A stretch of DNA of 64,000 nt from Haliotis rufescens. Taxonomy: Eukaryota. The stretch covers positions 19,902,001 through 19,966,000 of the forward strand of contig NW_025963868.1 in the NCBI RefSeq assembly GCF_023055435.1, given 5' to 3'. Below, in pieces: positions 7,430 to 53,190 of the stretch. Below the pieces are notes generated by a model that was not told the DNA's origin, ran no database searches, and saw only the letters and a program-made list of their open reading frames with translations. The translations under genes and the position numbers were made by a program. The first letter of the stretch is position 1. Each line of letters starts with the position of its first letter.

Positions 7430-8445
7430 CAGATCGTCCACATCGTCGTTGGAGAAGCAGCTGCAGTTGTTGTTGTCGCCGGCGTTCTGTATGTTAGGAG
7501 AAAAATGGATGGTGTTCGTTCAACAAGGATAAATTGGTCATTTACATTATCAGGCATACAATTTGATTCTTTGATTTAATATGCAATGTCCATAATGAAT
7601 GATTTACAGGATATATAAATGTGTATTCACAATTCGGGCGTCCACAGCAATTCCAGAAATACATTTTATGTCCTTTTGGAACGACTAACCTGAACGCAGG
7701 AACGAAAAAAATAGCCTCTTACAAAGGTATTTGTATTTCAAGTATAAGATCTTGGTAGGTTTAAATTGTTTGAAGTATGTATCATAACCCGTTCAAAGAA
7801 ATTCGACTGATGGTTTGCATAAAGGCCGTGTTTTTGTTGAAAGTTTCCTACATGTACATGGGCGGAATGTCTGTAGTTTTCAGTAAGTAAATATATTTGT
7901 TATTGAAACCTATGACAAAAATCGCAGTCCATACAAAATACAAGACTCTCTGCAATTCAATTTTGCATCATTTGATTTATTCACCTGAAACCCGAATCCA
8001 ACAATATGAAATGTTCTGTCGCTTGTTATGTTATGCAGTTTTATGCAAGAAATTCCTGATAGGATATTTTCGATTGTCTGCTAAAGATGCATGTCATATG
8101 TTAAATATTTGTCCTTATGATGTTTTAGAAACCTGGAGTTACAATACCACAACGATCTTGATAAAGTAAATGGTAGCTTCCTTAAATATATTCTGCTTTT
8201 GATCTGATGTTTCAAAACCAACAAATCATGCATATACTACAATTAACATACTCGGCATTGCACATATACGACCTACTTGAAGTTCTAAATCTTGTCTTTG
8301 CGAAGCACACATAACCACAATACAAACATCCAAGAACAAATGCATTCAGAGGAAATTTGTATATTTTCTAGTGGATAATGACATATACGTTGGTCACAGT
8401 TCATATGACGCCGATTCAAGAGAATGGTCTTCAGGCAAGTCACTG
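7430..8445 (+). pseudogene. Gene C: remnant paralogue of the TM receptors (TM-like segment 7430-7511, candidate exon 7610-7726, VDNDIY exon 8372-8434/8445)
   Basis: IVHIVVGEAAAVVVVAGVLYVRRK resembles the gene A TM; tttctag|TG GAT AAT GAC ATA TAC GTT GGT encodes VDNDIYVG, matching VDNVCYVG of gene B in the same phase. Confidence 0.55.
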
Positions 8446-8724
8446 GTAAGGTTCTCTGATCAAATTCTATTTACGATCCAGTCTCTGCAATTTGTGTGCT
8501 CCCCATATGAGGGTAATGAAGCGAAAACATGTAAAAATTTATAAGGTTACCATTTATTAGTGACATACAGCGCCTTTATGAATGTAGGTAAATGTCGGGG
8601 ATACTCGGAGGCTTCTCCTGTCCCTGAGATGATCTGAAAGTGATACCGGAAGCTAATATTAAAAGGGAGATAAATCCGACTTTCGTGTAAATGAGGGAGC
8701 ATATGTTGTGGCAGAAATATATCG

Positions 8725-8769
8725 CACACACGCACACGCACACGCACACGCACACAAACACACACACAC
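8725..8769. repeat. (CA)n/(CACACG)n microsatellite
   Basis: Directly visible. Confidence 0.95.
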
Positions 8770-9080
8770 GAAATCTGAGAAAAATGCATATATGATTGAA
8801 AATAAGAGATGTTATTATATATGTCAATTATGCAGACAAGTATTAAATGATGATAAAGTTTCATACACACCCCTATATAATGCGGATATATTTATACGCA
8901 CGCACACAAAACCATATATATGTAGTCGCATACACATAAGGTTAGTAGTAATAATTAAGTGAAGAATATCAAAACAATGAAATAAGTATGTGACGAAAAA
9001 ATGTGTATTGGTTACAAAAGCCTTCCCAATGTGCCAGAGGGGTTGTGAGTGGTGATAATCATTGTGAGTGGTGATAATCA

Positions 9081-11710
9081 TTACAATATCATGAAACTTG
9101 GACTTGACAAAATGTGCAGATCGCCTTTCTTCAGATCATCAAATAATATGAATGTGTACACTTTTTCTGGTTCGTTGTCATACACAATTATATTGTTATT
9201 GTGCCATTTTAAATAACCTGGTACTTGGGAAATGACCATCCCCATAAACCATTGTAAATTACCCTCCACATCCCATACATGATTCACCCTCTCTCCCACA
9301 AGAATACTCCTAGAGGAACCCTCACCAGTGTTGTTAGAAGCTGCCAGAGATATTAAACATTTTAGATTGTTAGTGAGAGTTGAAAGGTCAAATGTTTATT
9401 TTGTATTGTTTGAAAACTGTAAGAGAAGGGGATTTTCTGGTTTTTGTTTTAGAACATTATTTCGGAAACGAATTTGACACTTCAGTGCCTCCATACGCTC
9501 CTTCTTTGACCGATATTGATTAAAACGGTTGTCCACTTCACTGTGTATTTATGTATCATTATTGATTCTAGGTTGGCATCATGTTTACTTTGCTGTCTTT
9601 ATGTTTACGAGCAACTTCCTCTTGTTTGTGTTTGAGGGCATCCTGCTTTTGTTGCTGAATAATTAATTTGCGAAGTTAAAATTGGGTGAGGGATATTTTT
9701 GTAAGTTTTGAGGCATGGTTGAGGACATTCTGTTGGGAACCATGTGATAGAGTGACTATCCACTCATTACCCCTGTTGAAATTGAGAATTGATGTGTGAT
9801 TCCTGTGTGTAAACGGATGAAGATGGTTTGTGGTGCTTTATATAATGGAAACTGGAACTGACCAAATAGAGATTCCGTGAGTTTGTTGTGTTTTAAAAAC
9901 GAACTTCAATGTGGATGTGATTGTGAAGTTTTGTTCCAATGTATGCCTCCAGGGAGCTGATCTGCCAGAAGCCGCTGTAGAAGTGATGTGATGTATGGTG
10001 TGATATTCTCCAAGATGAGGTGGGTGGTGAGTCATTATTGCATGACGTTGTGAGCGCTTCAAGCACAGAATCAGGCTGATCTGTGAGTTTCAACACGTAT
10101 GGAAGAACCTCGACATCCCCTCTCATAAAACTTGGGAGCCGGGTAATAAGTGTGTCATATAAAATATTCATATCTAGGATTGTCCAGTCCTTGGGACCCG
10201 TGAGGATTCCGGGGTAGAATAGGTCTTCAGCAACCCATGCTTGCCGTAAAAGGCGACTCACGGGATCGGGTGGTCAGGCTCGCTGACTTGGTTGATGCAT
10301 GTCATCGATCCCAATTGCGTGGATCGATGCTCATGATATTAATCATTGGATTGTCTGGTCCAGACTCGACTATTAACAGACCGCCGTCATATCGCTGGAA
10401 TAGTGCTGAGTGCGGCGTTAAACAACAAACCAACCAACCAACCTGTCCTTGGCCTCAAGAATACGCCAAAGTGGATTCGTCAGCAACTTATCCAAGAGAC
10501 CAAGGGCACGACATCCGGATATGCAGAGCTCTGATGCCAATAATGTTGAAATGGATGTCAAAAGACGGTTCCTTGTTTCTGGAGTGAAACATGTATGTAA
10601 AAAATCTTTAAGGTCATCATATACATGGTACACTACAGCTGCATTGTGAAAGAGGATGTTAAAGTCGATTGCCACGAAAGTTGGTAAAATTCGTTTTCCT
10701 ACCTCTAGAAGTAAGAAATATGTTGACAGTTTCAAAGCAACCGCTTTTCTAAACCCCTCCTCTTGAAAAAGCTTTGCACGTCATGCGGACCAAGTCTATG
10801 ACAGATGATGTTTGAAGTTTGGTATTTTGATTCAAAAGTAGAGTGTTGGCGCATTGGTCTGCGATGTTCACAAAAAGATGAAGTCCACAAAAATAGTTGT
10901 CAATGTGGCCCATATCTACTTGTTTCTCCTGGGACAATGAATCCCACTCACTTTCAATGACAGGGAACACGTCTCTTTGTATTCTTGTAATGATACATTG
11001 AAAGCCTTCTCTGTGGCTGCGCTGTCTGACGTTGTATGTTTGATGTTAGCAATGATAGATGACCCTTTACCAGATATGACATTGACGTCATCAATGATTT
11101 CTTTCAGTGTGTCTACGGTTGCCTGCGCGGATTTGTTTGGAATTTCACGCATTCAAAGGATTGTTGGGTTTAGGTGCTGATTGGTAAGCACATACGTCTG
11201 ATATTGTTGTCCATGTTTGGATGTCTCGTCAGCGTACAGGGTGGTATGACTTTCCTTGTTGAAGGTAGCATCCATATGGGCATGGCTCAGGGGGCAATGT
11301 CATTGCTGCTATGTCAGCTACACAGGTTGGTGAGGGAAGGGCGTTTGCTTTTAATCCAACGAGATTAAATACGGTTTCATTACGTTATGGACGTGATCAT
11401 ACCCTACATTTCCCGAGAGAAGAGTCAAAACACACATCTTTGTGTCATTGCTATAGCTCTTACCGTTCTTTAAGGAAATCATGCCTCTGTGGAAAGTGAC
11501 ATCTTCGACATGTTTTCTTCACAAATAGTTTTCTCTATATCTTGTCGCAACTTACAGCAGTTTGTGCATTTCTGCGTAAAGGTCTGTGTTTGTTTACAAC
11601 TTTGTAAAGAACCTTTCACCTTTTCATTTGTTATTTCTTTTAGTTTCAAAAGTCTCTTTCGGTAAATACTTACTTGATTAGATTTACAAATAACTTGTGC
11701 CTTCATTTTC
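9081..11710 (-). mobile_element. Decayed hAT-like DDE transposase gene with a C-terminal Spindlin (Spin/Ssty)-like Tudor domain; element ends not resolved
   Basis: TLYADETSK (~11216-11242), TTSDSAATEKAFN, YFCGLH (CxxH), FNILFHNA, CRALGLLDKLLTNPLWR, LKCQIRFRNNVLKQ, then VGERVNHVW...WFMGMVISQVP...VYD...VYTFILFDDLKKGDLHIL (9081-9299). Confidence 0.75.
10196..10444 (+). mobile_element. SINE family 1, near-complete, inserted in the transposase
   Basis: Full consensus with (AACC)n tail; GTCCTTGG flanks both sides (10187-10194, 10445-10452). Confidence 0.9.
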
Positions 11711-13689: not shown

Positions 13690-13935
13690 TATTATATAAA
13701 TCATTTTGCCTAGAATCCTCTGCCAGAAGGCGGTGGCTCATGGGTCAATCTAGCATTATTGACCTTCATGTTCTATTTGTCTTCAGGTGACCGTCTGGGG
13801 CAGAACCAGCCTGACCTTTACCTTGTTTGACTACAATAGCTACCTGTGTCCTTTTTGCTTGAGTATGGCACCCCTGTAGCCCTGCTGTTTGTGGTCGGTT
13901 TCCAGTTCAACGCCATTCTTGCAGATATTCCATGT
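13690..13935 (+). mobile_element. Relic 5' UTR of an I-clade LINE
   Basis: gaaggcggtggctcatgggtcaatctag matches the reverse complement of ~1847-1874. Confidence 0.5.
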
Positions 13936-14029
13936 TGGTTGGGTTGTTGAATATATACTGAGTCAAATTAATTACATTTAGTACTAACTACTAAATGACT
14001 TTATCGCGCGTATCCAAACCATGGGCTAA

Positions 14030-20195: not shown

Positions 20196-20453
20196 AGTTG
20201 GTTGGTTGGTTTGTTGTTTGACGCCGCACTCAGCAATATTCCAGCTATATGACGGCGGTCTGTAAATAATCGAGTCTGGACCAGACAATCCAGTGATTGA
20301 TATCATGAGCATCGATCCACGCAATTGCGATTGATGACATGCATCAACCAAGTCAGCGAGCCTGACCACCCGATCCCGTTAGTCGTCTTTTACGCCAAGC
20401 ATAGTCACCTTTTACGGCAAGCATGGGTTGCTGAAGACCTATTCTACCCCGGA
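20196..20453 (-). mobile_element. SINE family 1 with duplicated 22-bp core
   Basis: Reverse complement of consensus; the tagtcg..ttacg.caagca unit occurs twice. Confidence 0.9.
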
Positions 20454-21983: not shown

Positions 21984-23438
21984 GTCGCTATATGGTTGAA
22001 AGAAGCTTCCTCACTGATAAATTTTTAGGAGACAAAAGTGACATTTTTAGCAATATCGGGAAAAAATGCCGAAAATGCCACAGAATAAAAAATCACAGTA
22101 GTATTCGTCGTAAAGGTGTTGCGTCTGGGTATGAGTGGGTTCCTTAAATACCTGGACGGTGTGATAGTCCAGTAGTTAAAGCGTTGCCTGGCCATGGTGT
22201 TTGAGGCTTAGTGATGGTGTAGCGGTATAGCGGGGATATTGTGACAGTAGCGTATGTACGCTGTTCTTACACTTCTACCGTGCACACACAAAAATAATAT
22301 CACCCCATGGGGCGTGGATATAGGTGAAAGCATTTTTCAGTAATTGTCACTGGGCATTATGACGTTTGCTTCATGCTGATTGGATAGTTCGCATCAATTG
22401 TTCCATTGTTTTCATCGTTTGCGAAGAGGTTCACGACAACGTGCGTCACTGAACACATTGTCGCATGTCACTGAGGATGGCGTCATCATAGCACAACATC
22501 ATTCACTCGGGGCAGATAACCCGTGAATCCTCGTAGCACGGAGGTTATCCTCCTATTGTTTCATAAGGTCCTCGCTGATTAGCCCTACTGGAGTAGCATC
22601 ATAATCATCATCATCCCGTTAGACAGCTTCTGAAAATATATTATTAGTATATAATACTTATAATGTATTGTACAACTTTGTGAGGTGAATCTTTGTAGCC
22701 AGTCGTCTTCCTGTTGATTCTAGGATAGAGGTGTTACTCATGCTATCAATCGCTATTCAGAGTCAGCTATGTAAAGACTGCTGGATATATGCAATATCTC
22801 GCATATTATTATGGTATCAATGCACATATTCATAAACATATATTAGAAAGTAAGAACAGTTTACCACACATGCAGAGATTACAATTAAAGGGAGAGAACC
22901 TGTTATCGTCGGAGCTTCAGGGAGTACCGACTCAGTCAAAGTGACTATTCTACACACACTATCCCAGACCAGCATCGAACACATTGCGTGCGCTGGACCT
23001 CGGGTTGTCCATCCACAAGATGGGGTGTGGTTCTAACGAGTACAGGCCATGGACATACCGCTTAAAAGGAATTTCCGTTTATAAATACAGGAACGATATG
23101 TGATCTGAAATTTGCTTTGAACAGTATTTCAGGTCTATCACTGCACGTCCAAATCAAACCGATGCGTTGGTGAATGACACAAGCACGGGTTAGACACAGA
23201 TCGTTGACAATATATGATTCCAACCCAAATGGTTCACTAACTCGTGTATTCTGCCTGTTTTGGAACTAAAATGTGAAAAATATCAAAATTAAAATTTACC
23301 TCTATCTTGGTGTTCCTCATCCTAGTGTTATTTTGTCTTCGGTTTCATCACCTGGACGTGCACATCTGACAACAGCAAGTAAAAGTGTAGACAAGTCGTA
23401 ATATAGTTTACCGACAGCTAGCATTACATGCAAATCTA

Positions 23439-23737: not shown

Positions 23738-24154
23738 TGCACTTGTAAGATCTGCAAGTGAACTAAACATATTTTTTAGGTGTAACGGTATTAAAATTCA
23801 ATAACAAGGTATGATATTAAAGACCACACTGCACAGCAGACATCATTTGAACTTTCGTAGAAAAGCATGAGTACTCAAATGATTACATTTCATATTTTTC
23901 GAAATATATTTTTTAAAATCTAACAGCTGGCGGAATGCTTACTCATTTATGTGGAGAATTGAATCCACTTACTTATGCATCATGGCTCGACTAGCTAATT
24001 ATGTACAACTCGGGGTTGGGGTGGGATCGGGGGAAACTCTGTACCTTGCGCCACTGGTTCCCTGTACTGTGTGGGGGCATCCGCTGATAAACATTCTGAT
24101 GACACTGTGTATAGCATGTTGTCCCGCATGGCTGAAACATAATATATCATAATT

Positions 24155-26425: not shown

Positions 26426-26539
26426 CTCCTGATGTGCGACGCCTTCTTCTTATAAATAGAACGACGACTACACCGACGAGGACAACAACTGCACAGGCAG
26501 ACCCTGCAGCTATGTAAACAACAGTCCTGCCACCCAAGT
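26426..26539 (-). CDS. Gene A exon 4: transmembrane helix and basic stop-transfer
   Basis: ctgttcag|AC...GGA G|gtaag; (D)LGGRTVVYIAAGSACAVVVLVGVVVVLFIRRRRRTSG; phase 1-1. Confidence 0.85.
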
Positions 26540-27180: not shown

Positions 27181-27183
27181 CGT

Positions 27184-29380: not shown

Positions 29381-29446
29381 CGTTATCTTTAGCTTCGCGG
29401 TTAGGAACTCGTGACAGATCAGCATACCTTCCAAGCCTTGCAGTAA
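29381..29446 (-). CDS. Gene A exon 3: short stalk
   Basis: ctgttccag|TT...AAC G|gtaaat; 66 nt, phase 1-1, open: (L)TARLGRYADLSRVPNREAKDN. Confidence 0.6.
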
Positions 29447-30991: not shown

Positions 30992-31321
30992 GTAATGTAA
31001 TGTGGTTGCTTGTCTCGCTCTTCACAGTATCCTTACACCACCACACAGAGCCTCTGTCAATGGTAGCGTTGATCATGAGAGTCACATTGTGTTGGAGGAC
31101 ATTACAGCTGACACTGACACGCCCTGACAAGTACTTGCTATAGATGTAAGGGTTGGATATGGCCGCTTTACTGAAAGTGGACAGAGACTGCGTAGTACGG
31201 AAGATGACGTTATCATCCCTGAACCAGTATCGGTTCACTTCGCCCCAGCTACTGCTGCAGATCAGAGTGATGGCTTGTCCGTCGGTTGCTGTTGGTGGAG
31301 AACTTGTCAGTACGAGAGAAC
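30992..31321 (-). CDS. Gene A exon 2: V-set-like immunoglobulin domain
   Basis: ttttgtgtag|GT...TTA C|gtgagt; 330 nt, phase 1-1; GQAITLIC...YWFR...YLSGRVSVS...VTLMI...DRGSVWWC with 73 residues between the Cys. Confidence 0.85.
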
Positions 31322-32319: not shown

Positions 32320-32389
32320 CTTCGAGTTTTATGAATTGAAGCAGGAACGCCAGCACGAACACGGCACTCTTCAACAATCTGCACCCCAT
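32320..32389 (-). CDS. Gene A exon 1: signal peptide
   Basis: MGCRLLKSAVFVLAFLLQFIKLE G|gtaag; phase 1 matches the Ig exon. Confidence 0.85.
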
Positions 32390-33909
32390 ACTTTCCAGTA
32401 TCAACATATGAATTTACTTACCTAATATAACAACTTTGATCTATACATTAATTACGAACGTGTGACATTCACCAACATTTGCGGGATAAAGACAAACAAC
32501 ACTTGCCACACCTGAGCGTCTCATCGCCCAATGAACTGACAGACGTGTGTACACGTAACAGTGAGATACGCATATTTCTGTAAATTCCCGTGTCCCCACA
32601 TCTAACTAGGACTTGGCTGTGTGGAAAAGCTATCAGTGTGTACACATCTTTGTATAGCTATATATTGAAAGGTCCAGAGCCACGAATGTTGATGACTTGA
32701 TGACATTGTTTTTCCTACTAGGAAGTTATGTTGGGTTTAATCTAGATTCGCCTTAATTCTACAAAAATGACATTTTTTTACCCGAGTAAGTGGCTGTTGT
32801 TATATGACCAATCAGTGAATAAGAAGAAAAACTGTTAAGCAACTGATCATAAATATTATACCGCATGTCGGCAAAGAAATGGTGCTTCTGTCAAATACAC
32901 GCCACATACAAATATAAACTGACATCCAACAATTAGGTCTGTTTATTCGCCAAAAATCATACGATCATATAGGTATGAATACGATTGTGTACACTGGATT
33001 GTTTGTTAAAACAAAATATTTATCCAGTGCGGTGTGTTTCAGTATTAGGACCATGACTAGAAATAAAAGTATAATCTATTAGCTGATCAGTTAAAGTTGT
33101 TAAACGCTGCAGTTTGATACATCCCAACTGTACACCTACTGTGAATACTATTTAGTGAGTCTGGACCAGACAGACCAGTGACCAAAGGCAAACACCTGTA
33201 CCATCGGGCTACAAGGTGTCGCAGTCAGCCAAGGTACAGAGCCTGACCACCCAACCCCCATAAAAACCCGGCAACATTGAGTGGGGTTAAATGTAACGTC
33301 GTTTAACAAATCTTAGGTACATTATGTTCATGAAAAACTATTTGGGGTGTTATAGTGTCCATGTTTTCGGCTATTGTAACATTTGACCCTGAACTAACCA
33401 GCTTGTCTGGAGGTGGGCCAACTTGTCACAGAAACGCATCACTTTCAGGAGCAGTCTGATATTCTCTGTCCTCTTTCTCTATGGAGGACGGCTCCAGCGG
33501 CAGCAATAACTGCAATTTAACATTTACGCCTTCTCCGCCAACGACTTGTGCAGCCAGTAGAACAAACTCACTCCGTCAGTCTTGTTGTTTGTGAGATCTA
33601 ATATAACCTATGGTATGTGGTATTTATCATATTTGTGAGCAGATATGCATACAAATCCACCTTTGATCAATAAGCACTATAGACGCGACAACGATATTGA
33701 CACCGGGTTATTATTTAAGCATAAACGTCAACACCAGTGTCAAGATTATCCCAAGAAACAGATTCCATTTAGCTCACAATGCAAAATGGCTGTGACGATT
33801 ATGTGAATGGATCACTGAAAATCAGTGGTGGCACCCGGGGTTCGCGGTAAGCATGTCCTGCCACTCGCCATTCACACAGGGAGTATAACAAGTAAGTGTA
33901 AACCATCCA

Positions 33910-41260: not shown

Positions 41261-42766
41261 TACTCTTCAAAAAAAGAAACGTGACATAGATGTAAAACCC
41301 CTTTTTGCCAAATATCTAAAATAATTACATTAAATGAGAACCAAATAAGTCAAACAGAAAGATGATGTGTCTATAATTCGCGAAAACACATGCAAAGCAC
41401 ATAAATGTAGCGTTTGGGGATCAATTTTACAGCTTCACCCAAAAGCAACCGCCTGTAAAAAACGTGCAGCACAGGATCATGCATTTAGGCATGCAGGCAC
41501 CCCTGCTGAATGGGTATTAAAATCCACATAAACGGCTGTTCATACAGTCCTTATAACGGCAGTAGAGGCGGTGACAGAATGCCAAGACTGAATGCAGCTC
41601 AACGGAACAACGCAATTGGGAGATTACAAGCTGGAGCAACTCAGCAAGAAGTGGCCAGGCACTTTGGCGTATTCAGACAGACAATCTCTGCACTGTGGAC
41701 CCAATACAACAACACCAACAGAGTTGACGACAGACCAAGGTCAGGAAGACCAAGGGTGACAACCCAAGCACAAGATCGATACATCCGGCTGCGACACCTC
41801 CGAGACCGCACTACCACAGCTACGTCTACAACCACACAGGTCCCTGGGGTACGCAGAATATCAGATCAAACGGTACGCAACAGACTGAGGGAGGCTGGAC
41901 TTTTTGCACGAAGACCTGTTCGACGTCATGTATTGACCCCACGTCATCTGGCGGACCGTCTCCTTTGGTGCCAACAGAGGGTTAGATGGGCACGTGCAAG
42001 GTGGAGAAATGTACTGTTTACTGACGTTTCCTACTCACACGTGCTGATGGGCGCGCACGTGTCTACAGACGTCGGGGTGAACGTTACGCCCCCAACTGTG
42101 TGCAGCAGGTTGTCCCATTTGGCGGCGGGAGTGTCATGGTATGGGCCGGAATTCATCACGGTGGTAGGACGCCTCTCGTGCATGTGGCAGGTGCATTAAC
42201 AGGTGTGCGTTACAGAGACTTGATCCTACAGCCTTACGTTCTTCCTTACGTTCAAGGCGGACAGTTCCAGCAGGACAACGCTCGACCGCATATTGCACGT
42301 GTTTGTCAGGACTTCTTACAGCACAACAACATCCAGACATTACCTTGGCCAGCCCTGTCACCAGATTTGTCCCCGATTGAGCATCTGTGGGACGAGTTGG
42401 ATCGACGCGTTCGCAGAAGGAATCCACCGCCCAAAACACTTCCGGCGCTTCTTGATGCACTTCAGCATGAATGGCAGCACATCCAACAGCGTGTTAATGA
42501 CAACTTGATTGCATCTATGGGTCGTCGGTGTCAAGAGGTGATTGATGCACGTGGTGGGCACAACCAATACTGACATTATCTGTACCCCTGTGCCATTAAC
42601 TGTATCGTGTACGTGTGTCTGTCTAGGTGACACGATTAATGTTTTGAACATTGTGTACATTGATCTTCAAACAGTGTTTCAATTATGGTTTATGTGTCCT
42701 ATTTCGAAACAATCGCATTATAATACATTTTGAAAGTCAGTGTCAAGTTTCTTTTTTTGAAGAGTA
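41261..42766 (+). mobile_element. Full-length Tc1 (DD34E) transposon 3 (transposase 41579-42573, one frameshift)
   Basis: 26-bp TIRs TACTCTTCAAAAAAAGAAAC(G/T)TGACA, TA TSD; VLFTD; QQDNARPH...SPIE with 34 residues between D and E. Confidence 0.96.
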
Positions 42767-42929: not shown

Positions 42930-42995
42930 CGTCTTTATGGCAATGAATCTTCTCCACATCGTCAAAGCCGACGTAACATACATTGTCGACCATCA
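42930..42995 (-). CDS. Gene B tail exon (second VDNxxY type)
   Basis: gtttttag|TG ATG...GAC G|gtaaag; (V)MVDNVCYVGFDDVEKIHCHKD; phase 1-1. Confidence 0.7.
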
Positions 42996-43699
42996 CTAAA
43001 AACAAAGATATTTTGTAATCCAACGTTGAAATGCAACGATAAATGAAGCACTTTTAGGCTTGTTAGAATGACCAAAAAAAACACACTGTGGACTGTGGTC
43101 AGAGGACTGACTATTTGAAAGATTTCAAAAGTATGGTAAACCTAGGTTAAAAACAGCAAAATAATGTGTGTTTTCTTAACTAGTCTAGCTTTCAAACAAC
43201 AAACATTCGTTTAGCTACTGGACACTTTCCTGTTGCAATTGATGTGATCCAAAGATAAAAAGAAAAATAGAGAAATCGTGTTAATAGATGATAGAATCAT
43301 GATGTCATAGCATCAGAATCATAACACACAGCAACATTTTGTAAGGATTAGTTCTATCTCACTAGTATTATTAACCTGTATTTGATGTCAAATATGTTCA
43401 ATTGATTTTAAACTTTCACTTCGGTATGTTGCAGCATGAACAACAGCTGCATGTGAATAAACGTACCAGAAAGACAACTGGATTGTGTTTCCCTGTATTA
43501 TTCCTGAATACACCATGAATAAATGCTGATATTAAAAATCAAAACAGGAAATAACATTAAAGTAATGCTATCTACTATTGCAGATGTAAAATGAATACGG
43601 AAACGCAAAAGTGAGAAACACAAATTAATTTAAAGAAAGTACCAAAAAGTAAACTAACCAAGCGTTTCATCCTCGCTCTCTGTATGGCCATCTTGAGTG

Positions 43700-44423
43700 C
43701 TACTGAAACATTACATGTAACAATACAGCCACGTGATATTGAAACATTATACGAAACAGTACAGCCACGCGCTACCGAAACATTATACGTAACATTACAG
43801 CCATGTGTTCTTGAAACATTACATGTAACAATACAGTCATGTGCTACTGAAACATTACATGTGTCAATACGACTATGTTGCATGGAATCATTGCAGTACC
43901 ATAGAGCCACGTACTAACGGAAACATTACGTGTAACAATACAGCAATGTTATGTTGTAACATTACACGTTACAATACAGCCCTGTGCTACAGAAACATTA
44001 CACGTTACAATACAGCCCTGTGCTACAGAAACATTACACGTTACAATACAGCCCTGTGCTACAGAGACATTACACGTTACAATACAGCCCTGTGCTACAG
44101 AAACATTACACGTTACAATACAGCCCTGTGCTACAGAAACATGACACGTTACAATACAGCCCTGTGCTACAGAAACATTACACGTTACAATACAGCCCTG
44201 TGCTACAGAAACATTACACGTTACAATACAGCCCTGTGCTACAGAAACATTACACGTTACAATACAGCCCTGTGCTACAGAAACATTACACGTTACAATA
44301 CAGCCCTGTGCTACAGAAACATTACACGTTACAATACAGCCCTGTGCTACAGAGACATTACACGTTACAATACAGCCCTGTGCTACAGTAACATTACACG
44401 TAACTATACAGCCACGTGCTACT
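43700..44423. repeat. 36-bp minisatellite, ~19 copies, homogeneous centre and degenerate left edge
   Basis: gaaacattacacgttacaatacagccctgtgctaca. Confidence 0.97.
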
Positions 44424-45625
44424 TTTATCTAACTATATATAGACCAGTTCACGAAAGATTTTTACATTTTATAAATAAATTGTTTATACACGTGCTCCTC
44501 TGAGGGAGATATATCTATACTACATCCTGATTTCAAATGAGAGTTGTTGTTTTCAGTTCATTTAAATCAGATTCTATATGTTCTCATTTACACAATGACC
44601 ACCCGATCCCGTTAGTCGACTCTTACGACAAGCATAGTCGCCTTTTAGGGCAAACATGGGTTGCTGAAGACCTATTCTAACCAGGATCTTCACGGGTCAC
44701 GTGCTACTGTAACATTTAACGTAACAATACAACCATGTGTTCACTGTCAATCCCTGGATTGTCTGGTTTATTATTTACAGACCACCGACACAAAACTAGA
44801 CTGGTGGGTTAAACAACAAACAGACGATGTAATCTTACTGTTAGCAAGGCCTCATAATCAGATGTGTTCCTATATCGATCGGGATCGGGTGGTTTGGCTC
44901 GCCGACTTGGTTAATGCACGTCATCGTATCCCAATTGCGTGGATCTATGCTCATGATGTCAATCACTGGAATGTCTGGTCCAGGCTCGATTATTCACAGA
45001 CCGCCGTCATATAGCTGGAATATTGCTGAGTGCGGCGTTAAATAACAAACAAACAAATCCTATATCGATACCCCATACTGATTTCATGTGCGCATAGTTG
45101 TTTACAGTTCATTAAAATGTATACGTTCTCATACATACAATGTCAATTTAACACTTACATCTCTTCTTCCAGGCGCTCTGAGTCTGTAGATGTCATCAAC
45201 ACCTGAATTGTGGAGGTCCCTGCTGGTTACAATATATCAGGATGAAAACTACAAGTAAATGTATTGCATAATACAGCTTTGTTGTGAAATGTATATATAT
45301 ATCAACATATATACCAATCAAATATAGGACTAAACACAGTGGTGTGTCTAAGTGTTTCTGTGGGATCAGACAATGGTAATATTTCCATGATCAACTCCGG
45401 TGAAACAAAAAAGAAGCTTCTTGACAGCATTCATGTCCCTTCAGCCGCGTGCATATACTCCTGGAAAAAGACTAAGCACCGTGTATTATGTATTTCCTTG
45501 TAAAAACTTTATTGTAACAAATCATATCCTGTGTCAATATTCTGACGAAACAAAGAAAAGTGAAACTTGGACTTAAGTAAGTGAACAAATTGCATAAGGG
45601 TTCCTTGTATACGAGTGTATCTGAC

Positions 45626-45694
45626 CTTCTGTTTGTCCAAGATCCTGCTCTTCCTCCTCCAGAAACCCGATGTAACAGACGTTGTCCACCATAA
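45626..45694 (-). CDS. Gene B duplicated VDNVCY exon (copy 1); companion 47-nt exon at 46059-46105
   Basis: ctgtttcag|TT ATG GTG GAC AAC GTC TGT TAC...GAA G|gtcaga. Confidence 0.5.
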
Positions 45695-47249
45695 CTGAAA
45701 CAGTATTTATTATTATGTAATGTTGTTTCAGTCATTAGTCAGAAAACAGAGTATAATGTTATCTACTGTTTGATGGTTATATAGAAGTGTGTCGAGGGCT
45801 TTGTTTCATATTGTATATGTTACTTAAAAAAGGAACATGTCAAAATTATATTTTTCTCATTCTGTCCTGTATTTGTATACACTCACATATTAGTACGCAT
45901 GCACTAAAGTACACAGGCACACATCTGTATACATATTGCATATTATAAATGTGTTTGCATATCATTTCAATACGGCAGTAAAATATTAAAAATGTATCGG
46001 TTAATACAATGTTTCAAGTGAAAATCAATGACATCAATAGAAAAAATCAAAGACTTACCCAAGCTATCGTCGATGTGACTTTCTGTATGCTCAATCTCCT
46101 CAGACCTGCAACATTCGTCAATGCTGAAGTTATTCGTTTTCCCTAAGGCGCCGAGATTCGCTGTGCAGAGTTGCGTCCCTTGGGCACGCCAGAAACCTAT
46201 GATTGTGGGTTCGAATTCCAGTTCGCCCCGATTATGTTTCTAGGTGTGTCAGCACCATACCCGTGCTCGTGGGTTTTACCGAAGTGGTAAACATCTGAGA
46301 CCTGCATCAATTCGGCCTTCTTCCCACATTAAGCTGACACGCCGTGATGTAACTGGAATACTGTTAAAAGCGGCGTTAAACCGTACTCACAATTCGTTTT
46401 CCCTTTGTGATTACTCCTACAAAGATGCATTGGCTCCATTCAAATAGGTACATGTAATTGCAAAGATGCACCCGAGGCTTACACAATTTGATGAATGGTT
46501 AATCTTTACTGAGAGCAGACCTTTTAGACTAGTATATGTGTTCAAAGCCTGGGCCGTTGTTGTTGCTGTTGTTTAACGCCGCACTCAGCAATGTTCCAGC
46601 TATGTACTCGATTATTCACAGACCGCCGTCATATAGCTGGAATATTGCTGAGTGCGGCGTTAAACAACAAACAAACAAATCCTATATCGATACTCCATAC
46701 TGATTTCATGTGCGCATAGTTGTTTACAGTTCATTAAAATGTATACGTTCTCATACATACAATGTCAATTTAACACTTACATCTCTTCTTCCAGGCGCTC
46801 TGAGTCTGTAGATGTCATCAACACCTGAATTGTGGAGGTCCCTGCTGGTTACAATATATCAGGATAAAAAAACTACAAGTAAATGTATTGCATAATACAG
46901 CTTTGTTGTGAAATGTATACATATATCAACATATATACCAATCAGATATAGGACTAAACACAGTGGTGTGTCTAAGTGTTTCTGTGGGATCAGACAATGG
47001 TAATATTTCCATGATCAACTCCGGTGAAACAAAAAAGAAGCTTCTTGACAGCATTCATGTCCCTTCAGCCGCGTGCATATACTCCTGGAAAAAGACTAAG
47101 CACCGTGTATTATGTATTTCCTTGTAAAAACTTTATTGTAACAAATCATATCCTGTGTCAATATTCTGACGAAACAAAGAAAAGTGAAACTTGGACTTAA
47201 GTAAGTGAACAAATTGCATAAGGGTTCCTTGTATACGAGTGTATCTGAC

Positions 47250-47318
47250 CTACTGTTTGTCCAAGATCCTGCTCTTCCTCCTCCAGAAACCCGATGTAAC
47301 AGACGTTGTCCACCATAA
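47250..47318 (-). CDS. Gene B duplicated VDNVCY exon (copy 2); companion 47-nt exon at 47683-47729
   Basis: As copy 1 with one substitution (E>V). Confidence 0.5.
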   Translation of the reverse strand, partial: LWWTTSVTSGFWRRKSRILDKQ

Positions 47319-48706
47319 CTGAAACAGTATTTATTATTATGTAATGTTGTTTCAGTCATTAGTCAGAAAACAGAGTATAATGTTATCTACTGTTTGATGG
47401 TTATATAGAAGTGTGTCGAGGGCTTTGTTTCATATTGTATATGTTACTTAAAAAAGGAACATGTCAAAATTATATTTTTCTCATTCTGTCCTGTATTTGT
47501 ATACACTCACATATTAGTACGCATGCACTAAAGTACACAGGCACACATCTGTATACATATTGCATATTATAAATGTGTTTGCATATCATTTCAATACGGC
47601 AGTAAAATATTAAAAATGTATCGGTTAATACAATGTTTCAAGTGAAAATCAATGACATCAATAGAAAAAATCAAAGACTTACCCAAGCTATCGTCGATGT
47701 GACTTTCTGTATGCTCAATCTCCTCAGACCTGCAACATTCGTCAATGCTGAAGTTATTCGTTTTCCCTAAGGCGCCGAGATTCGCTGTGCAGAGTTGCGT
47801 CCCTTGGGCACGCCAGAAACCTATGATTGTGGGTTCGAATTCCAGTTCGCCCCGATTATGTTTCTAGGTGTGTCAGCACCATACCCGTGCTCGTGGGTTT
47901 TACCGAAGTGGTAAACATCTGAGACCTGCATCAATTCGGCCTTCTTCCCACATTAAGCTGACACGCCGTGATGTAACTGGAATACTGTTAAAAGCGGCGT
48001 TAAACCGTACTCACAATTCGTTTTCCCTTTGTGATTACTCCTACAAAGATGCATTGGCTCCATTCAAATAGGTACATGTAATTGCAAAGATGCACCCGAG
48101 GCTTACACAATTTGATGAATGGTTAATCTTTACTGAGAGCAGACCTTTTAGACTAGTATATGTGTTCAAAGCCTGGGCCGTTGTTGTTGCTGTTGTTTAA
48201 CGCCGCACTCAGCAATGTTCCAGCTATGTACTCGATTATTCACAGACCGCCGTCATATAGCTGGAATATTGCTGAGTGCGGCGTTAAACAACAAACAAAC
48301 AAATCCTATATCGATACTCCATACTGATTTCATGTGCGCATAGTTGTTTACAGTTCATTAAAATGTATACGTTCTCATACATACAATGTCAATTTAACAC
48401 TTACATCTCTTCTTCCAGGCGCTCTGAGTCTGTAGATGTCATCAACACCTGAATTGTGGAGGTCCCTGCTGGTTACAATATATCAGGATAAAAAAACTAC
48501 AAGTAAATGTATTGCATAATACAGCTTTGTTGTGAAATGTATACATATATCAACATATATACCAATCAGATATAGGACTAAACACAGTGGTGTGTCTAAG
48601 TGTTTCTGTGGGATCAGACAATGGTAATATTTCCATGATCAACTCCGGTGAAACAAAAAAGAAGCTTCTTGACAGCATTCATGTCCCTTTAGCCGCGTGC
48701 ATATAC

Positions 48707-51120
48707 GTGTAGGATCAAAACCGAGGGCAAGTTTTTGATCTCACTTATATGAACTGATCAAAGATATGATTTAGAAATAATTTTACTAATTGGTATTAAC
48801 ATGAATTCATTGATATTTACTCTTGAGAATTTAACTGCAATACGCGGGGAGTACATCCGCGCGCTGCACGTGCTTCAGGCCCGTTGTAACAATGAGCGCA
48901 CGTGGTTCAAGCCAGTCGAGTGAATTCCACTGAAGAGGATGGACGCAGACGACGACAATTTATTTCTGACGCAGTCAGTTTTTAAAGAATCGATTCTGTG
49001 CTGAAGAAGACAAGGAAAGTGATGACTTTAAATTCCGTTTTGGAGATCCACTCTCCGAGCGTGAAATAACCAAGAAAATTTAGATCTGTGTCCCTAGAAA
49101 AACACGTTATAAAAATGACTGGGCATTCTCAACATTTAAACGGTGGCAAGAAGAACGCAAGTCACGGTCAATTGCGGACAATTTGGAATTACCGCAAAAG
49201 TGCTTGACAGAGGATATAGTCGAAATGAGCCTATCTACTATGAACACCGCTTTCAAATATTTACTTTTTGAGGCGAGGAAACAGGACGGCACCCAGTACA
49301 TGGCGGATACTGTACATCGACTGTTTACCGCTCTTCAGAGTGGCTTGAGGCTTAAAGGGCGAAAGAACATTAATTTGTTCGAGGATCAACAGTTTGAAGA
49401 GAGCAGAACATGTCTGGACGCTTTAATGAAGGAACTTTCTGGGGACTGGGCAGCTCTGCCAGGAAGAAAACTGAAACTATATCAATGGACGACGAAGAGC
49501 GCTTGTGGAGTAGCGGTTCATTAGGCGAAGACGACCCCCAGCAACTTGTGGATACGGTTCTTTATCTTACCGGTAAGTAAAGTAAACCACACAGTTGTTT
49601 TTCTTTATATCTTCGAAAATTACTTTTACAAATAGTATAAACTAAATCATTGGAATTTGTTCATTCACATATAAAATTGAAATATTAATGTGTGAACCTT
49701 TTTAAACACAAAAGTTTAACAGTTTGTTGAAATAATTAACTGAATTTTCATTATTGTTCATATTTGCCTTTGTCTAAAATACACATTTTCAAAACATTTA
49801 CACAGGTTTGCATTTCGCACTGCGAGGAGGAAGAGAGCATACAGCGCTGAGGCTGTTCTCGAACCCCCAAATAACAGGTCCCCACACTGACGATAATGGC
49901 AGAAAGTATCTACTCTACACGGAAGACGCGTCAAAGACTAATCACGGCGGCCTGAAGCACAGGAAGCTGGTACCGAAACAAGTTCGAGCGTATGAGAACA
50001 CGGACAACCTTAAAAGATGTTTTGTGCGTCTCTTTGAAAAGTACAGGTCATTGTGGTAAGTGTTAAAAAACACCAATGCAAATTGCATGTATTACCTACG
50101 TTTATTTAGGGGTTTGGGAATTATGTATTTGATAATCGCTTTATATAAATCTTGACTACATTCTAAATTTTGAATGAAATTTTCAGAAGGTGGAGTATCA
50201 GCCCACTCAATACATTGTTTCACAAAAACAAATATTACAAGTGTCCCTTTCTATGTTATTTCCCCCAGCAAACCTGGTCAACATACTGAATACTTCTACT
50301 TCACTCCAAGAAGGACTAGAACGTCGAAAGACTGGTATACTGCAAATGCCATCGGCCACAACACCTTACAAGTTACCGTCAAAAGACTGTGCAAGACGTC
50401 CGGTATTCAGGGCATGAAGGCAAACCATTCCTTGAGAGCCACGGCAGCCACTCGACTGTATCAAGGTGACGTTGATGAACAAATGATTTGCGAAATTACC
50501 GGTAGGTTGATAAACATTATAGTCTTGCAGTAATAAGAAATTGTTATTCAGCAAAAGTCATAACATATCAAAGAAATATTTTTTCCAAACCAGTAAGAAG
50601 GTCTTTTTTATTTATGATATATATGGTAATATTGGTGTTTTTGGAATCTGTAATAGTTTTTAAGTGTATTTGTATGCTGTATGTGTAATACTTTCGAAAT
50701 TACAAGAGAACTTCCGACAACCAAAAGGCAACGGTCTCTGACATACTTAGTATGTCGAAAAAAATGAACTCGCCATCACGTGAAGAAGCTGATCCGAAAA
50801 GAGCAGATGACCAAAGACCTGAAGACAAACTAAATCGAACTGTGACGCTCAATTTCAATTTCAACTAATATCAATAAATAGTTGAGCCATGTTCTGTTGT
50901 TTTTTTCTTGCAGAAGGGTAGTTCAATACAGAGGGTATTCTTCGGGACAAAAACCAGGCTTTCAGTAGAAAATCTCCCGGGATTTCTTGCAGAAAGCCCG
51001 GGGCTTACCCTAGGAATGCCCGGGGCTTACCCTGGGAATGCCCTGTAAACTACCTGTAGAAGTTTAGTCGGTAAAAGAAGACCCTTGCGAGACAATAGAG
51101 TGACGTCACTAGAGGTTTAT
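48707..51120 (+). mobile_element. Crypton (CryptonA/DUF3504-like) tyrosine-recombinase DNA transposon, four-exon gene, disrupted
   Basis: Exons ~48939-49571, 49806-50055, 50269-50501, ~50695-50868 with GT-AG introns; EARKQDGTQY, HFALRGGREH (R), SKTNHGGL (K), NHSLRAT (HxxR), EITG, RNYKRTS (Y); frameshifts in exon 1 and the HRS segment is missing. Confidence 0.9.
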
Positions 51121-51171
51121 AAGTAAGTGAACAAATTGCATAAGGGTTCCTTGTATACGAGGGTATCTGAC

Positions 51172-51240
51172 CTTCCGTTTGTCCAAGATCCTGCTCTTCC
51201 TCCTCCAGAAACCCGATGTAACAGACGTTGTCCACCATCA
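51172..51240 (-). CDS. Gene B tail exon (VDNVCY)
   Basis: (V)MVDNVCYIGFLEEEEQDLGQTE; 69 nt, phase 1-1. Confidence 0.65.
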
Positions 51241-51605
51241 CTGAAACAGTATTTATTATTATGTAATGTTGTTTCAGTCATTAGTTAGAAAACAGAGTAT
51301 ATTGTTATCTACTGTTTGATGGTTATATAGAAGTGTGTCGAGGGCTTTGTTTCATATTTTATAAAAAGGTTTAGCAAAATGTTACTAAAAATAGTAACAT
51401 GTCAAAATTATATTTTTCTCATTCTGTCCTGTATTTGTATACACTCACATATTAGTACGCATGCACTAAAGCACACAGGCACACATCTGTATACATATTT
51501 GCATATTATAATTTCAATACGGCAGTAAAATATTAAAAATGTATCGGTTAATACAATGTTTCAAGTGAAAATCAATGACATCAATAGAAAAAATCAAAGA
51601 CTTAC

Positions 51606-51652
51606 CCAAGCTATCGTCGATGTGACTTTCTGTATGCTCAATCTCCTCAGAC
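51606..51652 (-). CDS. Gene B tail exon
   Basis: gttgcag|G TCT...TTG G|gtaagt; (R)SEEIEHTESHIDDSL; phase 2-1. Confidence 0.7.
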
Positions 51653-52600
51653 CTGCAACATTTCCATACTCGTCAATGCTGAAGTTATTCGTTTTCCCTA
51701 AGGCGCCGAGATTCGCTGTGCAGAGTTGCGTCCCTTGGGCACGCCAGAAACCTATGATTGTGGGTGCGAATTCCAGTTCGCCCCGATTATGTTTCTAGGT
51801 TTGTCAGCACCATACCCGTGCTCGTGGGTTTCACCGAAGTGGTTAAGCTGACACGCCGTGATGTAACTGGGATACTGTTAAAAGCGGCGTTAAACCGTAC
51901 TCACTATTCGTTTTCCCTTTGTGATTACTCCTACAAAGGTGCATTGGCTCCATTCAAATAGGTACATGTAATTGCAAAGATGCACCCGAGGCTTACACAT
52001 TTTGATGAATGGTTAATCTTTACTGAGAGCAGATCCTTTAGACTAGTATATGTGTTCAAAGCCTGGGCCGTTGTTGTTGCTGTTGTTTAACGCCGCACTC
52101 ACCAATGTTCCAGTTATGTAATATTACTCTGTAAATAATCGAGTCTGGACCAGACAGGTCAGTGATACCATAATCATCTGTCCACGTAATATGACTGGGC
52201 AACGGTGACATGCATCAACCGAGTCACCTGGATCTTTAAGTCGCCTCTTGAGACAAGCAAAGGTTGCTGGAGAATATATTCTTACCCGGAATTACCACGG
52301 ATATACAGCAAGAATGCTATAAGTGTCACACACGACATTTTAGCATAATTTGAAGATAACTGCAACATTTAATTTGTTAATATACAGGATATGAAATGAA
52401 CGATAGGTTTACTGGTACAAGAACAACGTCATTATGTCGGAGAGATGACGCATGCCATTTAGACGAACATGTAAACAATGCAGAAAAACAGCGTGACACA
52501 AACGTGACACTAACAACTACTGCTTTTGTGTATGTTTAGGACAGTTATTGTAGTGAATATTGCAATTGCTTACAGATAAATCTATTTTCGGGGAGATTAC

Positions 52601-52631
52601 CTTTTCATGTTCTGACCCTCATGATCATAAC
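52601..52631 (-). CDS. Gene B juxtamembrane exon
   Basis: ttttgccacag|GT TAT...AAA AG|gtaatc; (S)YDHEGQNMK(R); phase 1-2 bridges the TM exon and 51652. Confidence 0.65.
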
Positions 52632-53070
52632 CTGTGGCAAAAGAACACACCATTATGTTAGGAGTATGCCCAGATTACGGTACACGTCAACACTATATAC
52701 ACGCTGAGTTTTAAATCTGAGGTACAAAGATTACTTACTTCCCTCATTTCACGCCGACAGAGTGACCCTTCCACATCTAGGACCACGTATTAACACACAG
52801 ACACTCTACAGGGTATCCAAGCAATACTTGTACCGATACAGAGAGAGTATTTCTAATATATATACTTTCTTCTTGGTGCTCTTTTACGTCTATAATTCTA
52901 TTGGTTTCATTGTTGATTTTGACTACTCGTATCTATGACACGTCTTATCAATACACTGTTTTGAATTATTGAATATGATGTCAATCATTGACTTCACATA
53001 GCGATTTCATGTGATAGGTCAACTAACCTTGAACGTTAGTGTCCGAACATGTTGCTGGTAAACCACTTAC

Positions 53071-53190
53071 TGACTCTAGAATGATCTCTCCTTCTCTTCC
53101 TCACACACCAAATGATGACAGCGATGATGACGATGGCAACCACTGCACCTGCTGGTGTTCCTGTGCTGGCCGCTATAACGATTGTTTCAT
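53071..53190 (-). CDS. Gene B transmembrane exon
   Basis: cttgtcacag|AT...GTC A|gtaagt; ETIVIAASTGTPAGAVVAIVIIAVIIWCVRKRRRDHSRV; phase 1-1. Confidence 0.85.

What the first reader, a model, noticed from the sequence alone, without database searches (positions are those of the whole stretch)
7430..53190. Hidden cluster of paralogous Ig-type single-pass receptors with Tyr-motif tails, in different states of decay
Seen: three TM segments of similar design (small-residue G/A stretch, Val/Ile run, basic cluster) at 26426-26539 (-), 53071-53190 (-) and 7430-7511 (+). A small phase-1 VDNxxY[VI]G exon is shared by genes B and C. Gene A has a full signal-Ig-stalk-TM chain. Established: clustered Ig receptors with Tyr-based tails that evolve by birth and death are typical of immune and allorecognition loci (vertebrate CD300/TREM/NITR, Hydractinia Alr). 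Inference: this is a fast-evolving, probably poorly described invertebrate immune or self-recognition receptor locus. Only gene A's ectodomain is visible, so Ig membership of B and C is inferred.
Basis: partly seen in the sequence, partly recalled or inferred. Interest (0 to 1): 0.85.

Follow-up and report, generated by a model that had tools for sequence, protein, structure and literature searches.

The report
Abalone Ig receptor gene plus two relics
This stretch of abalone chromosome holds one intact, already annotated single-Ig membrane receptor gene and two decayed relatives, all from a large abalone-only gene family that nobody has studied and whose function is unknown.

Summary
The three transmembrane-plus-basic-cluster segments are the only ones in all six frames (0.04 expected by chance). 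The small [DE]NxxY exon is real and is a hallmark of the whole family.

- **Gene A** is RefSeq LOC124147988 (Haliotis rufescens, 240 aa, 100% identical). Its Ig domain is strongly conserved between abalone species; its tail is not.
- **Gene B** keeps an intact TM exon and four NxxY exons, three of them in a 99-100% identical 1,624-bp tandem triplication. Its likely Ig exon is broken by stop codons and a SINE insertion. No RNA-like contig covered its exons.
- **Gene C** is only a 1.2-kb fragment copied from a paralogue 131 kb away. It has lost its donor site and carries frame-breaking indels.

The family has more than 100 Ig exons in the genome, mostly in tandem clusters on this chromosome. All hits whose source was looked up are Haliotis proteins, mostly named "uncharacterized"; no paper was found. 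Paralogue Ig exons diverge at pN/pS about 1.

So birth-and-death in an undescribed Ig receptor family is supported. Immune or self-recognition function remains inference, and canonical ITIM/ITAM motifs are absent from A, B and C. The scan's other notes on this lie on this same window, not on other DNA.

The parts
32320..32407 (-). Gene A exon 1: start codon and signal peptide, ends in phase 1
   Evidence: 100% match to residues 1-30 of P0002; GT donor
30992..31321 (-). Gene A exon 2: V-type Ig domain, phase 1-1
   Evidence: 100% match to P0002; pLDDT above 90, and Foldseek top hits are TCR V-beta and antibody V domains; splice sites
29381..29446 (-). Gene A exon 3: short stalk, phase 1-1
   Evidence: Match to P0002 residues 140-161; AG and GT sites
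26426..26539 (-). Gene A exon 4: transmembrane helix and RRRRR stop-transfer cluster, phase 1-1
24045..24131 (-). Gene A exon 5: tail exon with the RDNMLY (NxxY) motif and the invariant QY-x-x-P tyrosine, phase 1-1
   Evidence: Match to P0002 residues 200-228; splice sites; conservation
23328..23365 (-). Gene A exon 6: last tail motif (His where relatives have Tyr) and the stop codon
   Evidence: 100% match to P0002 residues 229-240
63480..63960 (-). Gene B: probable decayed Ig exon. Collinear family-like pieces (W-Y-x-N-N-V strand C; L-R-I-N-A-S-I-D...C strands E-F; S-N-G-I-T-I strand G) with several stop codons, one in the Trp-Trp doublet just before the second conserved Cys
   Evidence: tblastn hits; family HMM score 5.9, reached by 1 of 60 shuffled windows; translation
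63590..63712 (.). High-copy SINE-like element inserted inside the Ig relic
   Evidence: 2,763 first-look candidates genome-wide; the 40 scored are 86-96% identical; boundaries
59552..62256 (-). 21-nt minisatellite reading VSTPDSS on the gene B strand. It may be a former mucin-like stalk, or it may be unrelated
   Evidence: the frame is broken by 3 stops and a frameshift; no codon-position signal; only low-complexity matches elsewhere
53071..53190 (-). Gene B TM exon, phase 1-1, with intact AG and GTAAGT sites
   Evidence: 54% identical to the TM exon region of P0006; unique in the genome at DNA level
51172..51240 (-). Gene B NxxY (MVDNVCY) exon, copy 1, phase 1-1
   Evidence: lies in the 1,624-bp repeat
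47250..47318 (-). Gene B NxxY exon, copy 2
45626..45694 (-). Gene B NxxY exon, copy 3
42930..42995 (-). Gene B diverged fourth NxxY exon, phase 1-1, 69% identical to the tail of P0062. No terminal exon was found downstream
44985..52120 (.). Local tandem triplication of a 1,624-bp unit (99-100% identity). A Crypton-like element at about 48800-51120 interrupts the third copy
   Evidence: the unit is found nowhere else in the genome; QRICH1 and Phage_integrase hits
7315..8484 (+). Gene C: a 1.2-kb fragment paralogue (TM exon, intron, NxxY exon) of the family gene at C90:19777648-19778893
   Evidence: 70% identity over 1,270 aligned columns; no homology beyond the fragment; exon identity equals intron identity at 75-77%
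7430..7511 (+). Gene C TM relic: a 16-19 nt indel at the 5' end puts it in the wrong phase, a +1 frameshift follows RRK, the ancestral donor GT is now AT, and there is a Glu in the helix
8372..8445 (+). Gene C NxxY (VDNDIY) exon relic, with a 10-nt deletion relative to the paralogue
   Evidence: (56% identical to the P0024 tail)

Best explanation
The window is one edge of a Haliotis-restricted multigene family of type I membrane proteins. Each protein has a signal peptide, one V-type Ig domain, a Ser/Thr-rich stalk of variable length, one TM helix with a basic stop-transfer cluster, and a cytoplasmic tail built from small symmetrical (phase 1-1) exons. Each tail exon carries a tyrosine motif (NxxY, YxxV, YxxP or YxN). 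The locus shows birth and death directly. Gene A (LOC124147988) is intact and conserved across abalone species. Gene B keeps spliceable TM and tail exons, one of them just triplicated, but has lost its ectodomain to stop codons and a SINE insertion. Gene C is a dead 1.2-kb partial duplicate of a neighbouring paralogue. Inferred, not shown: intact members bind a ligand through the V domain and signal through tyrosine phosphorylation of the tail motifs, which recruit PTB- and SH2-type adaptors.
For: Gene A matches XP_046374840.2 at 100% and has six exons with consensus splice sites. It has orthologues in H. cracherodii (95%) and H. asinina (61% overall, Ig exon 81%). V-type Ig evidence: invariant Cys51 and Cys125, Trp62 and D-x-G-x-x-W-x-C across 43 relatives; AlphaFold pLDDT above 90 with TCR and antibody V domains as top folds; a profile hit to antibody V domains at 1.5e-8. 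The genome holds 106 matches to the Ig exon, in tandem clusters. All 29 hits with the family's one-or-few-Ig architecture whose source was seen are Haliotis proteins. The TM design and the [DE]NxxY exon recur across relatives. Gene C's decay was read off an alignment to its paralogue. For gene B. Seven independent closest paralogue pairs give a pooled pN/pS of 1.05 in the Ig exon.
Against: There is no transcript evidence for any of the three units. The one read-laying run, on gene B, showed only repeats and transposon copies, and the run search found no run on record as RNA. Gene B's Ig relic is statistically weak: HMM score 5.9, about 1 in 60 by chance. The 21-nt repeat shows no coding signature, so B's former ectodomain is not proven. 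The Ig domain falls below Pfam gathering scores. The tail motifs are not canonical ITIM or ITAM, and no kinase or adaptor link was tested. Only 39 of the 76 hits had their source looked up, so restriction to Haliotis is not exhaustive.
Confidence: 0.78

Rival explanations
1. Gene B is still a working gene. Its intact TM and NxxY exons would be spliced to ectodomain exons I did not recognise, inside or beyond the window, and the Ig-like relic at 63.5-64.0 kb would be coincidence.
For: The TM exon and all four NxxY exons have open frames and good AG/GT sites in the family's phase. The Ig relic's score is weak. Contigs cannot show absence of expression.
Against: No family Ig exon other than the relic lies within 20 kb upstream on that strand. 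The relic is on the right strand and in the right order, with collinear pieces. No terminal exon with a stop codon was found after the last NxxY exon. No contig covers the exons in four runs.
Confidence: 0.12
2. The family is not immune or allorecognition machinery. It would instead be ordinary cell-surface adhesion or glycocalyx proteins (Ig plus mucin), or reproductive or developmental recognition proteins. The tyrosine motifs would then serve sorting or endocytosis (YxxPhi, NxxY) rather than immunoreceptor signalling.
For: Gene A's Ig domain is strongly conserved between species, as expected for a fixed endogenous ligand. Relatives are auto-named mucin-like or serine-rich adhesin-like. A, B and C have no canonical ITIM or ITAM. 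NxxY and YxxPhi are also sorting signals (established knowledge).
Against: The family is large and lineage-specific, sits in tandem clusters, shows pN/pS near 1 in the Ig exon, and has variable tails including tail-less and TM-less forms. This pattern is typical of immune-type receptor families. None of it is decisive.
Confidence: 0.4
3. The TM-like segments and motif exons of B and C are chance open frames in repeat-rich DNA.
For: The window is full of transposons and minisatellites with long open frames.
Against: Three segments were found against 0.04 expected. C aligns over 1.2 kb to a family gene. B's exons match family TM and tail exons at 54-69% identity and have family-phase splice sites. 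B's repeat unit is local, not a dispersed element.
Confidence: 0.02

Closest known systems
RefSeq 'uncharacterized protein LOC124147988' (Haliotis rufescens) and its Haliotis paralogues (LOC124121873, LOC124125591, LOC124118994, some auto-named mucin-22-like or MTL1-like)
   Same: Gene A is this protein (100%). B and C match the TM and tail exons of paralogues.
   Different: These are computer annotations without any described function, and no paper mentions them. B and C are not represented by any protein I could find.
Vertebrate TIM (T-cell Ig and mucin, HAVCR) family
   Same: Type I architecture with one N-terminal V-type Ig domain, a mucin-like Ser/Thr stalk, a TM helix and a tyrosine-bearing tail. 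The genes are clustered.
   Different: The only sequence relationship is generic Ig similarity. Here there are 2-3 cysteines in the V domain, whereas TIM V domains have six (own knowledge). The tail motifs differ, and the family is more than ten times larger.
Single-V immunoreceptor clusters (CD300, TREM, NITR, PILR)
   Same: A single V domain, tandem clusters, birth-and-death evolution with pseudogenes, and members with long tyrosine tails next to short-tailed or secreted ones.
   Different: The A, B and C tails have no canonical ITIM or ITSM. Intact members have no charged TM residue for adaptor pairing. No DAP12- or FcR-gamma-like partner is known in molluscs (own knowledge).
Invertebrate IgSF recognition loci (Hydractinia Alr, Botryllus fester, Biomphalaria FREPs)
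   Same: Lineage-specific, clustered and rapidly diversifying Ig-domain genes in invertebrates.
   Different: FREPs are secreted Ig-fibrinogen fusions. Allodeterminants are highly polymorphic, while gene A's ectodomain is conserved across species.

Membership tests
Immunoglobulin superfamily, V-type domain | Two cysteines about 65-75 residues apart forming the core disulfide, with a Trp 10-13 residues after the first | tested here: met
   Cys51 and Cys125 are invariant and Trp62 nearly invariant in 43 relatives
Immunoglobulin superfamily, V-type domain | D-x-G-x-Y-x-C motif before the second Cys, and an Arg that pairs with the Asp | tested here: met
   D118, G120, W123 (in place of Tyr), C125 and R97 are invariant or at least 90% conserved
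Immunoglobulin superfamily, V-type domain | Score above the Pfam gathering cut-off for an Ig family | tested here: not met
   Ig_2 scored 22.9 bits against a cut-off of 27, and V-set 20.3 against 26. Only 11 of 43 relatives hit Ig_2 at E below 0.01
Immunoglobulin superfamily, V-type domain | Beta-sandwich fold with C' and C'' strands, matching solved V domains | tested here: met
   AlphaFold pLDDT is 90-98 over residues 31-140, with nine strands. Foldseek top 50 hits are TCR V-beta, antibody V and nanobody domains at probability 1.00, with target TM-scores mostly 0.6-0.73. Profile against PDB antibody V domains gave E 1.5e-8
Haliotis single-Ig/stalk/TM/Tyr-tail family (LOC124147988-like) | Family Ig exon | tested here: met
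   Verdict is for gene A (100%). Gene B has a relic only, inconclusive at HMM score 5.9. Gene C has none within 27 kb upstream
Haliotis single-Ig/stalk/TM/Tyr-tail family (LOC124147988-like) | Phase 1-1 TM exon with a small-residue stretch, a Val/Ile run and a basic cluster | tested here: met
   A and B are intact. C is recognisably homologous but broken
Haliotis single-Ig/stalk/TM/Tyr-tail family (LOC124147988-like) | Phase 1-1 tail exon starting h-[MVL]-x-[DE]-N-x-x-Y | tested here: met
   Found in A, B (four copies) and C. The same motif occurs in relatives P0006, P0011, P0014, P0019, P0025, P0039 and P0062
ITIM/ITAM immunoreceptors (CD300, KIR, NITR type) | Canonical ITIM [SIVL]xYxx[IVL], ITSM TxYxx[VI] or ITAM in the tail | tested here: not met
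   A has M-L-Y-T-V-S and Q-Y-R-E-P. B has V-C-Y-I-G-F. C has D-I-Y-V-G-H. Of 48 TM-bearing relatives, 8 have an ITIM pattern and 4 an ITAM-like pattern
ITIM/ITAM immunoreceptors (CD300, KIR, NITR type) | Activating forms carry a charged TM residue that pairs with a signalling adaptor | tested here: not met
   A, B and the listed relatives have no charged residue in the TM helix. The Glu in C sits in a dead fragment
TIM (HAVCR) family | Six-cysteine V domain with a metal-dependent ligand pocket (own knowledge) | tested here: not met
   Only Cys51, Cys102 and Cys125 are present in gene A, and only two are invariant in the family
Hydractinia Alr / allorecognition loci | Extreme allelic polymorphism of the ectodomain within a species | not testable with these tools
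   No population data were available. Between species, gene A's Ig domain is conserved

The most novel reading that the evidence does not exclude
The more than 100-member Haliotis family would be a lineage-specific immune-type recognition system, convergent with vertebrate TIM/CD300/NITR receptors. In this reading the V domains diversify between paralogues, and signalling strength is tuned by gain, loss and duplication of modular phase-1 tyrosine-motif exons. Gene B's fresh triplication and gene A's eroding tail would be snapshots of that process, including decoy or paired forms.
Probability: 0.2. Interest if true: 0.7.

Novelty: new member of a known kind. Interest (0 to 1): 0.48.

Why it matters
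Molluscs lack antibodies, and their candidate diversified receptors are known mainly from snails (FREPs) and oysters. An abalone-only family of more than 100 single-V-domain membrane receptors has not been described. It has exon-modular tyrosine tails, tandem clusters, pN/pS near 1 between paralogues and visible pseudogene relics. It would be a concrete candidate set for abalone haemocyte recognition, which is relevant to withering syndrome and herpesvirus in farmed abalone. It would also be a clean case of how signalling tails evolve by exon duplication and loss. For this window alone the result is more modest: one annotated gene plus two relics.

Tried and rejected
- **RNA evidence.** The look-up of sequencing runs listed no run on record as RNA. 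The single read-laying run, on gene B (48900-54000, four runs guessed to be RNA), gave zero depth over the TM exon and almost none over the NxxY exon. It gave huge depth only on SINE-like repeats, and low depth on divergent copies of the Crypton-like element. These runs are contigs, so this is no evidence of silence.
- **The 21-nt repeat as gene B's mucin stalk.** It reads as a Ser/Thr/Pro-rich heptad on the right strand. However, it has 3 stops and a frameshift, no third-position excess of variation, and only low-complexity matches genome-wide. This is left open.
- **A fourth relic on the minus strand at 4.6-5.6 kb.** An S/T-rich piece at 4640-4744 and a weak Ig-like hit at 5445-5621 have E-values of 0.01-0.08 and no supporting structure. 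Rejected as unsupported.
- **An Ig exon for gene C.** None was found in the window or in the 20 kb upstream of it.
- **Literature.** Searches by locus names and by topic found no description of the family.
Full report
**What is at the stated coordinates**

Translating the three places gives hydrophobic helices of 19-23 residues. Each has a short small-residue stretch, a Val/Ile run and a basic cluster. A scan of all six frames looked for a 19-residue window of mean hydropathy at least 2.2 followed by three basic residues. It found exactly these three; 100 dinucleotide-preserving shuffles gave a mean of 0.04 and never more than one. The VDNxxY motif occurs five times, once after the plus-strand helix and four times after the helix at 53 kb.

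**Organism and gene A**

A whole-library HMMER search with the Ig exon (30993-31319, minus strand) returned a 240-aa protein that is 100% identical. That protein is XP_046374840.2, 'uncharacterized protein LOC124147988' of Haliotis rufescens, the red abalone. A 95% identical orthologue exists in H. cracherodii. The window is G000:C90:19902001-19966000.

Mapping the protein back gives six coding exons with consensus splice sites:
- 32320-32407: signal peptide
- 30992-31321: Ig domain
- 29381-29446: stalk
- 26426-26539: TM
- 24045-24131: first tail exon
- 23328-23365: second tail exon

Every internal exon is in phase 1-1. The two tail exons were missed, and the first of them carries the same motif, as RDNMLY. 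A separate first-reader note says gene A had lost its tail; as stated, that is not correct.

**The ectodomain is a V-type Ig domain**

- Pfam Ig models hit only below their gathering scores.
- In an alignment of 43 relatives, Cys51 and Cys125 are invariant. Trp62, Arg97, Asp118, Gly120 and Trp123 are at least 90% conserved. This is the classical V/I-set core.
- AlphaFold2 with this alignment gives pLDDT 90-98 across the domain, with nine strands.
- Foldseek's best PDB matches are TCR V-beta, antibody V and nanobody domains (probability 1.00).
- The family profile hits antibody V domains in PDB sequences at 1.5e-8.

**The family**

The Ig exon has 106 matches in this genome at E below 0.001. 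Most are on the same chromosome, in tandem clusters at 7.5, 11.6, 12.9-13.4, 15.4, 19.75-19.78 and 22 Mb. Further clusters lie on C157, C602 and C268.

Full-length relatives share one plan: signal, one V domain (a few have several), a Ser/Thr-rich stalk of very variable length, the same TM design, and a tail. Tails are modular and fall into types:
- a [DE]NxxY unit followed by repeated D-V-Y-A-x-V-x-K and D-x-Y-A-K-P units
- YxN-rich tails
- very short tails
- forms without a TM helix

Among 48 TM-bearing relatives the motif counts are NxxY in 23, YxxP in 20, YxN in 19 and YxxV in 19. Canonical ITIM occurs in 8 and an ITAM-like pattern in 4.

I saw the source of 39 of the 76 hits. All 29 with the family architecture were from Haliotis (rufescens, cracherodii, rubra, asinina). 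The ten others were long multi-Ig or unrelated proteins from vertebrates, a bacterium or unnamed sources, and match only generically. No paper names these loci or describes such a family.

**Gene C**

The 1.2 kb from 7315 to 8484 aligns at about 70% identity, intron included, to C90:19777648-19778893. That is the TM-to-NxxY part of a family gene 131 kb upstream. Homology stops at both ends of the fragment.

Exon identity (77% and 76%) equals intron identity (75%), which indicates neutral evolution. Relative to the paralogue, the fragment has these defects:
- a 16-19 nt indel at the start of the TM exon, which leaves the helix frame in phase 0 instead of phase 1
- a +1 frameshift after the RRK cluster
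- the donor GT changed to AT
- a 10-nt deletion in the NxxY exon

No Ig exon lies within 27 kb upstream. Gene C is a dead partial duplicate, not a receptor gene.

**Gene B**

*Intact parts.* The TM exon (53071-53190) and four NxxY exons (51172-51240, 47250-47318, 45626-45694, 42930-42995) all have open frames and AG/GT sites in the family's phase 1-1. They match family TM and tail exons at 54% and 69% identity.

*Recent duplication.* Three of the NxxY exons lie in a 1,624-bp tandem unit at 99-100% identity. A Crypton-like element interrupts the third copy. The unit exists nowhere else in the genome. This is therefore a very recent local exon duplication, or possibly an assembly artefact, and not a dispersed repeat.

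*The ectodomain.* Upstream on the same strand, 63480-63960 holds collinear family-like pieces corresponding to strands C, D/E, E-F and G. These are interrupted by several stop codons, one in the Trp-Trp doublet just before the second conserved Cys, and by a 122-bp high-copy SINE-like insertion. The family HMM scores this region 5.9, and one of 60 shuffled windows reached that level. I rate it about 75% likely to be a true relic.

*The possible stalk.* Between the relic and the TM exon lies a 2.6-kb 21-nt minisatellite that reads VSTPDSS on the gene's strand. It could be a former mucin stalk. However, it is broken by stops and a frameshift, shows no codon-position signal, and has only low-complexity matches elsewhere.

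*Missing parts and expression.* No terminal exon follows the last NxxY exon. Contigs of four runs guessed to be RNA did not cover any gene B exon; because these are contigs, this is not evidence of silence. Gene B is most likely a pseudogene whose 3' half is still intact.

**Rates of change**

Gene A's Ig exon differs at 1 of 110 residues from H. cracherodii and is 81% identical to H. asinina. Against H. asinina the stalk (23%), signal (34%) and tail (46%) have diverged much more.

Within the tail, the NxxY tyrosine is His in both other species. The last motif has His in the two close species and Tyr in H. asinina. Only the Q-Y-x-x-P tyrosine is invariant. Gene A thus keeps a constrained ectodomain while its tail motifs erode, which partly rescues the idea of a decoy-like drift.

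In contrast, seven phylogenetically independent closest pairs of paralogous Ig exons, mostly from the 13-Mb cluster, give a pooled pN/pS of 1.05, with single pairs up to 3.4. Variability is higher in predicted loops than in strands (entropy 1.28 against 0.91). This is fast ectodomain divergence. It does not separate positive selection from relaxed constraint.

**Mechanism**

*Shown:* the architecture, the family relationship, the exon modularity and the states of decay.

*Inferred from established knowledge of such motifs:* intact members are cell-surface receptors that bind a ligand through the V domain. Tail tyrosines would be phosphorylated and read by PTB domains (NxxY) and SH2 domains (YxxP of the Crk/Abl type, YxN of the Grb2 type, YxxV). 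Alternatively the motifs serve sorting. Whether the ligands are microbial, self or developmental is unknown.

**Verdict**

However:
- the anchor gene is already annotated
- it is conserved rather than fast-evolving
- the two other 'genes' are relics
- the immune label is analogy only

The wider, undescribed Haliotis family is the interesting part.

**Tool and procedure notes**

Noticed in passing
window 44985-52120: A 1,624-bp unit is present in three tandem copies at 99-100% identity. A Crypton-like tyrosine-recombinase element (QRICH1, Phage_integrase and DUF3504 hits, 49183-50533 +) interrupts the third copy. Such high identity means either a very recent duplication or an assembly artefact.
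   Followed up: partly
window 63590-63712, and at least 15 other places in the window (for example 10322-10442, 20197-20317, 27619-27725, 44942-45057, 53878-53983): A SINE-like element of about 120 bp with thousands of copies genome-wide (2,763 first-look candidates). It is present at very high depth in the RNA-like contig sets of four runs from three organism labels.
   Followed up: partly
window 27080-29080: Tandem duplication with a 1,027-bp period inside gene A's intron between the stalk and TM exons. Identical ORF pieces are seen at 27547-27723 and 28574-28750.
   Followed up: no
window 57755-59406, 59620-62186, 43697-44422, 54047-54617: Four large minisatellites, with period and copy number of 39 nt x 42, 21 nt x 122, 36 nt x 20 and 22 nt x 26. 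They are open in several frames, which produces long spurious ORFs.
   Followed up: partly
window 41510-42573 (+), 36662-37424 (-), 18382-18717 (-): Fragments of Tc1/mariner transposase (HTH_Tnp_Tc3_2 and DDE_3).
   Followed up: yes
G000:C90:19747445-19781015: Three more family Ig exons on the plus strand (19.747, 19.759 and 19.775 Mb) lie 120-155 kb before the window. The third belongs to the gene that gave rise to fragment C. Its Ig match reads through two stop codons, so it may itself be damaged.
   Followed up: partly
P0002 against P0077 and P0086 (gene A orthologues): The NxxY tyrosine of gene A (Tyr207) is His in both H. cracherodii and H. asinina. The last tail motif has Tyr only in H. 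asinina. One tyrosine (Q-Y-x-x-P, Tyr222) is invariant.
   Followed up: yes
window 4640-4744 (-): A short Ser/Thr-rich open frame resembling family stalks (E 0.013), with a weak Ig-like hit at 5445-5621 (-). Together these were too weak to call a fourth relic.
   Followed up: partly
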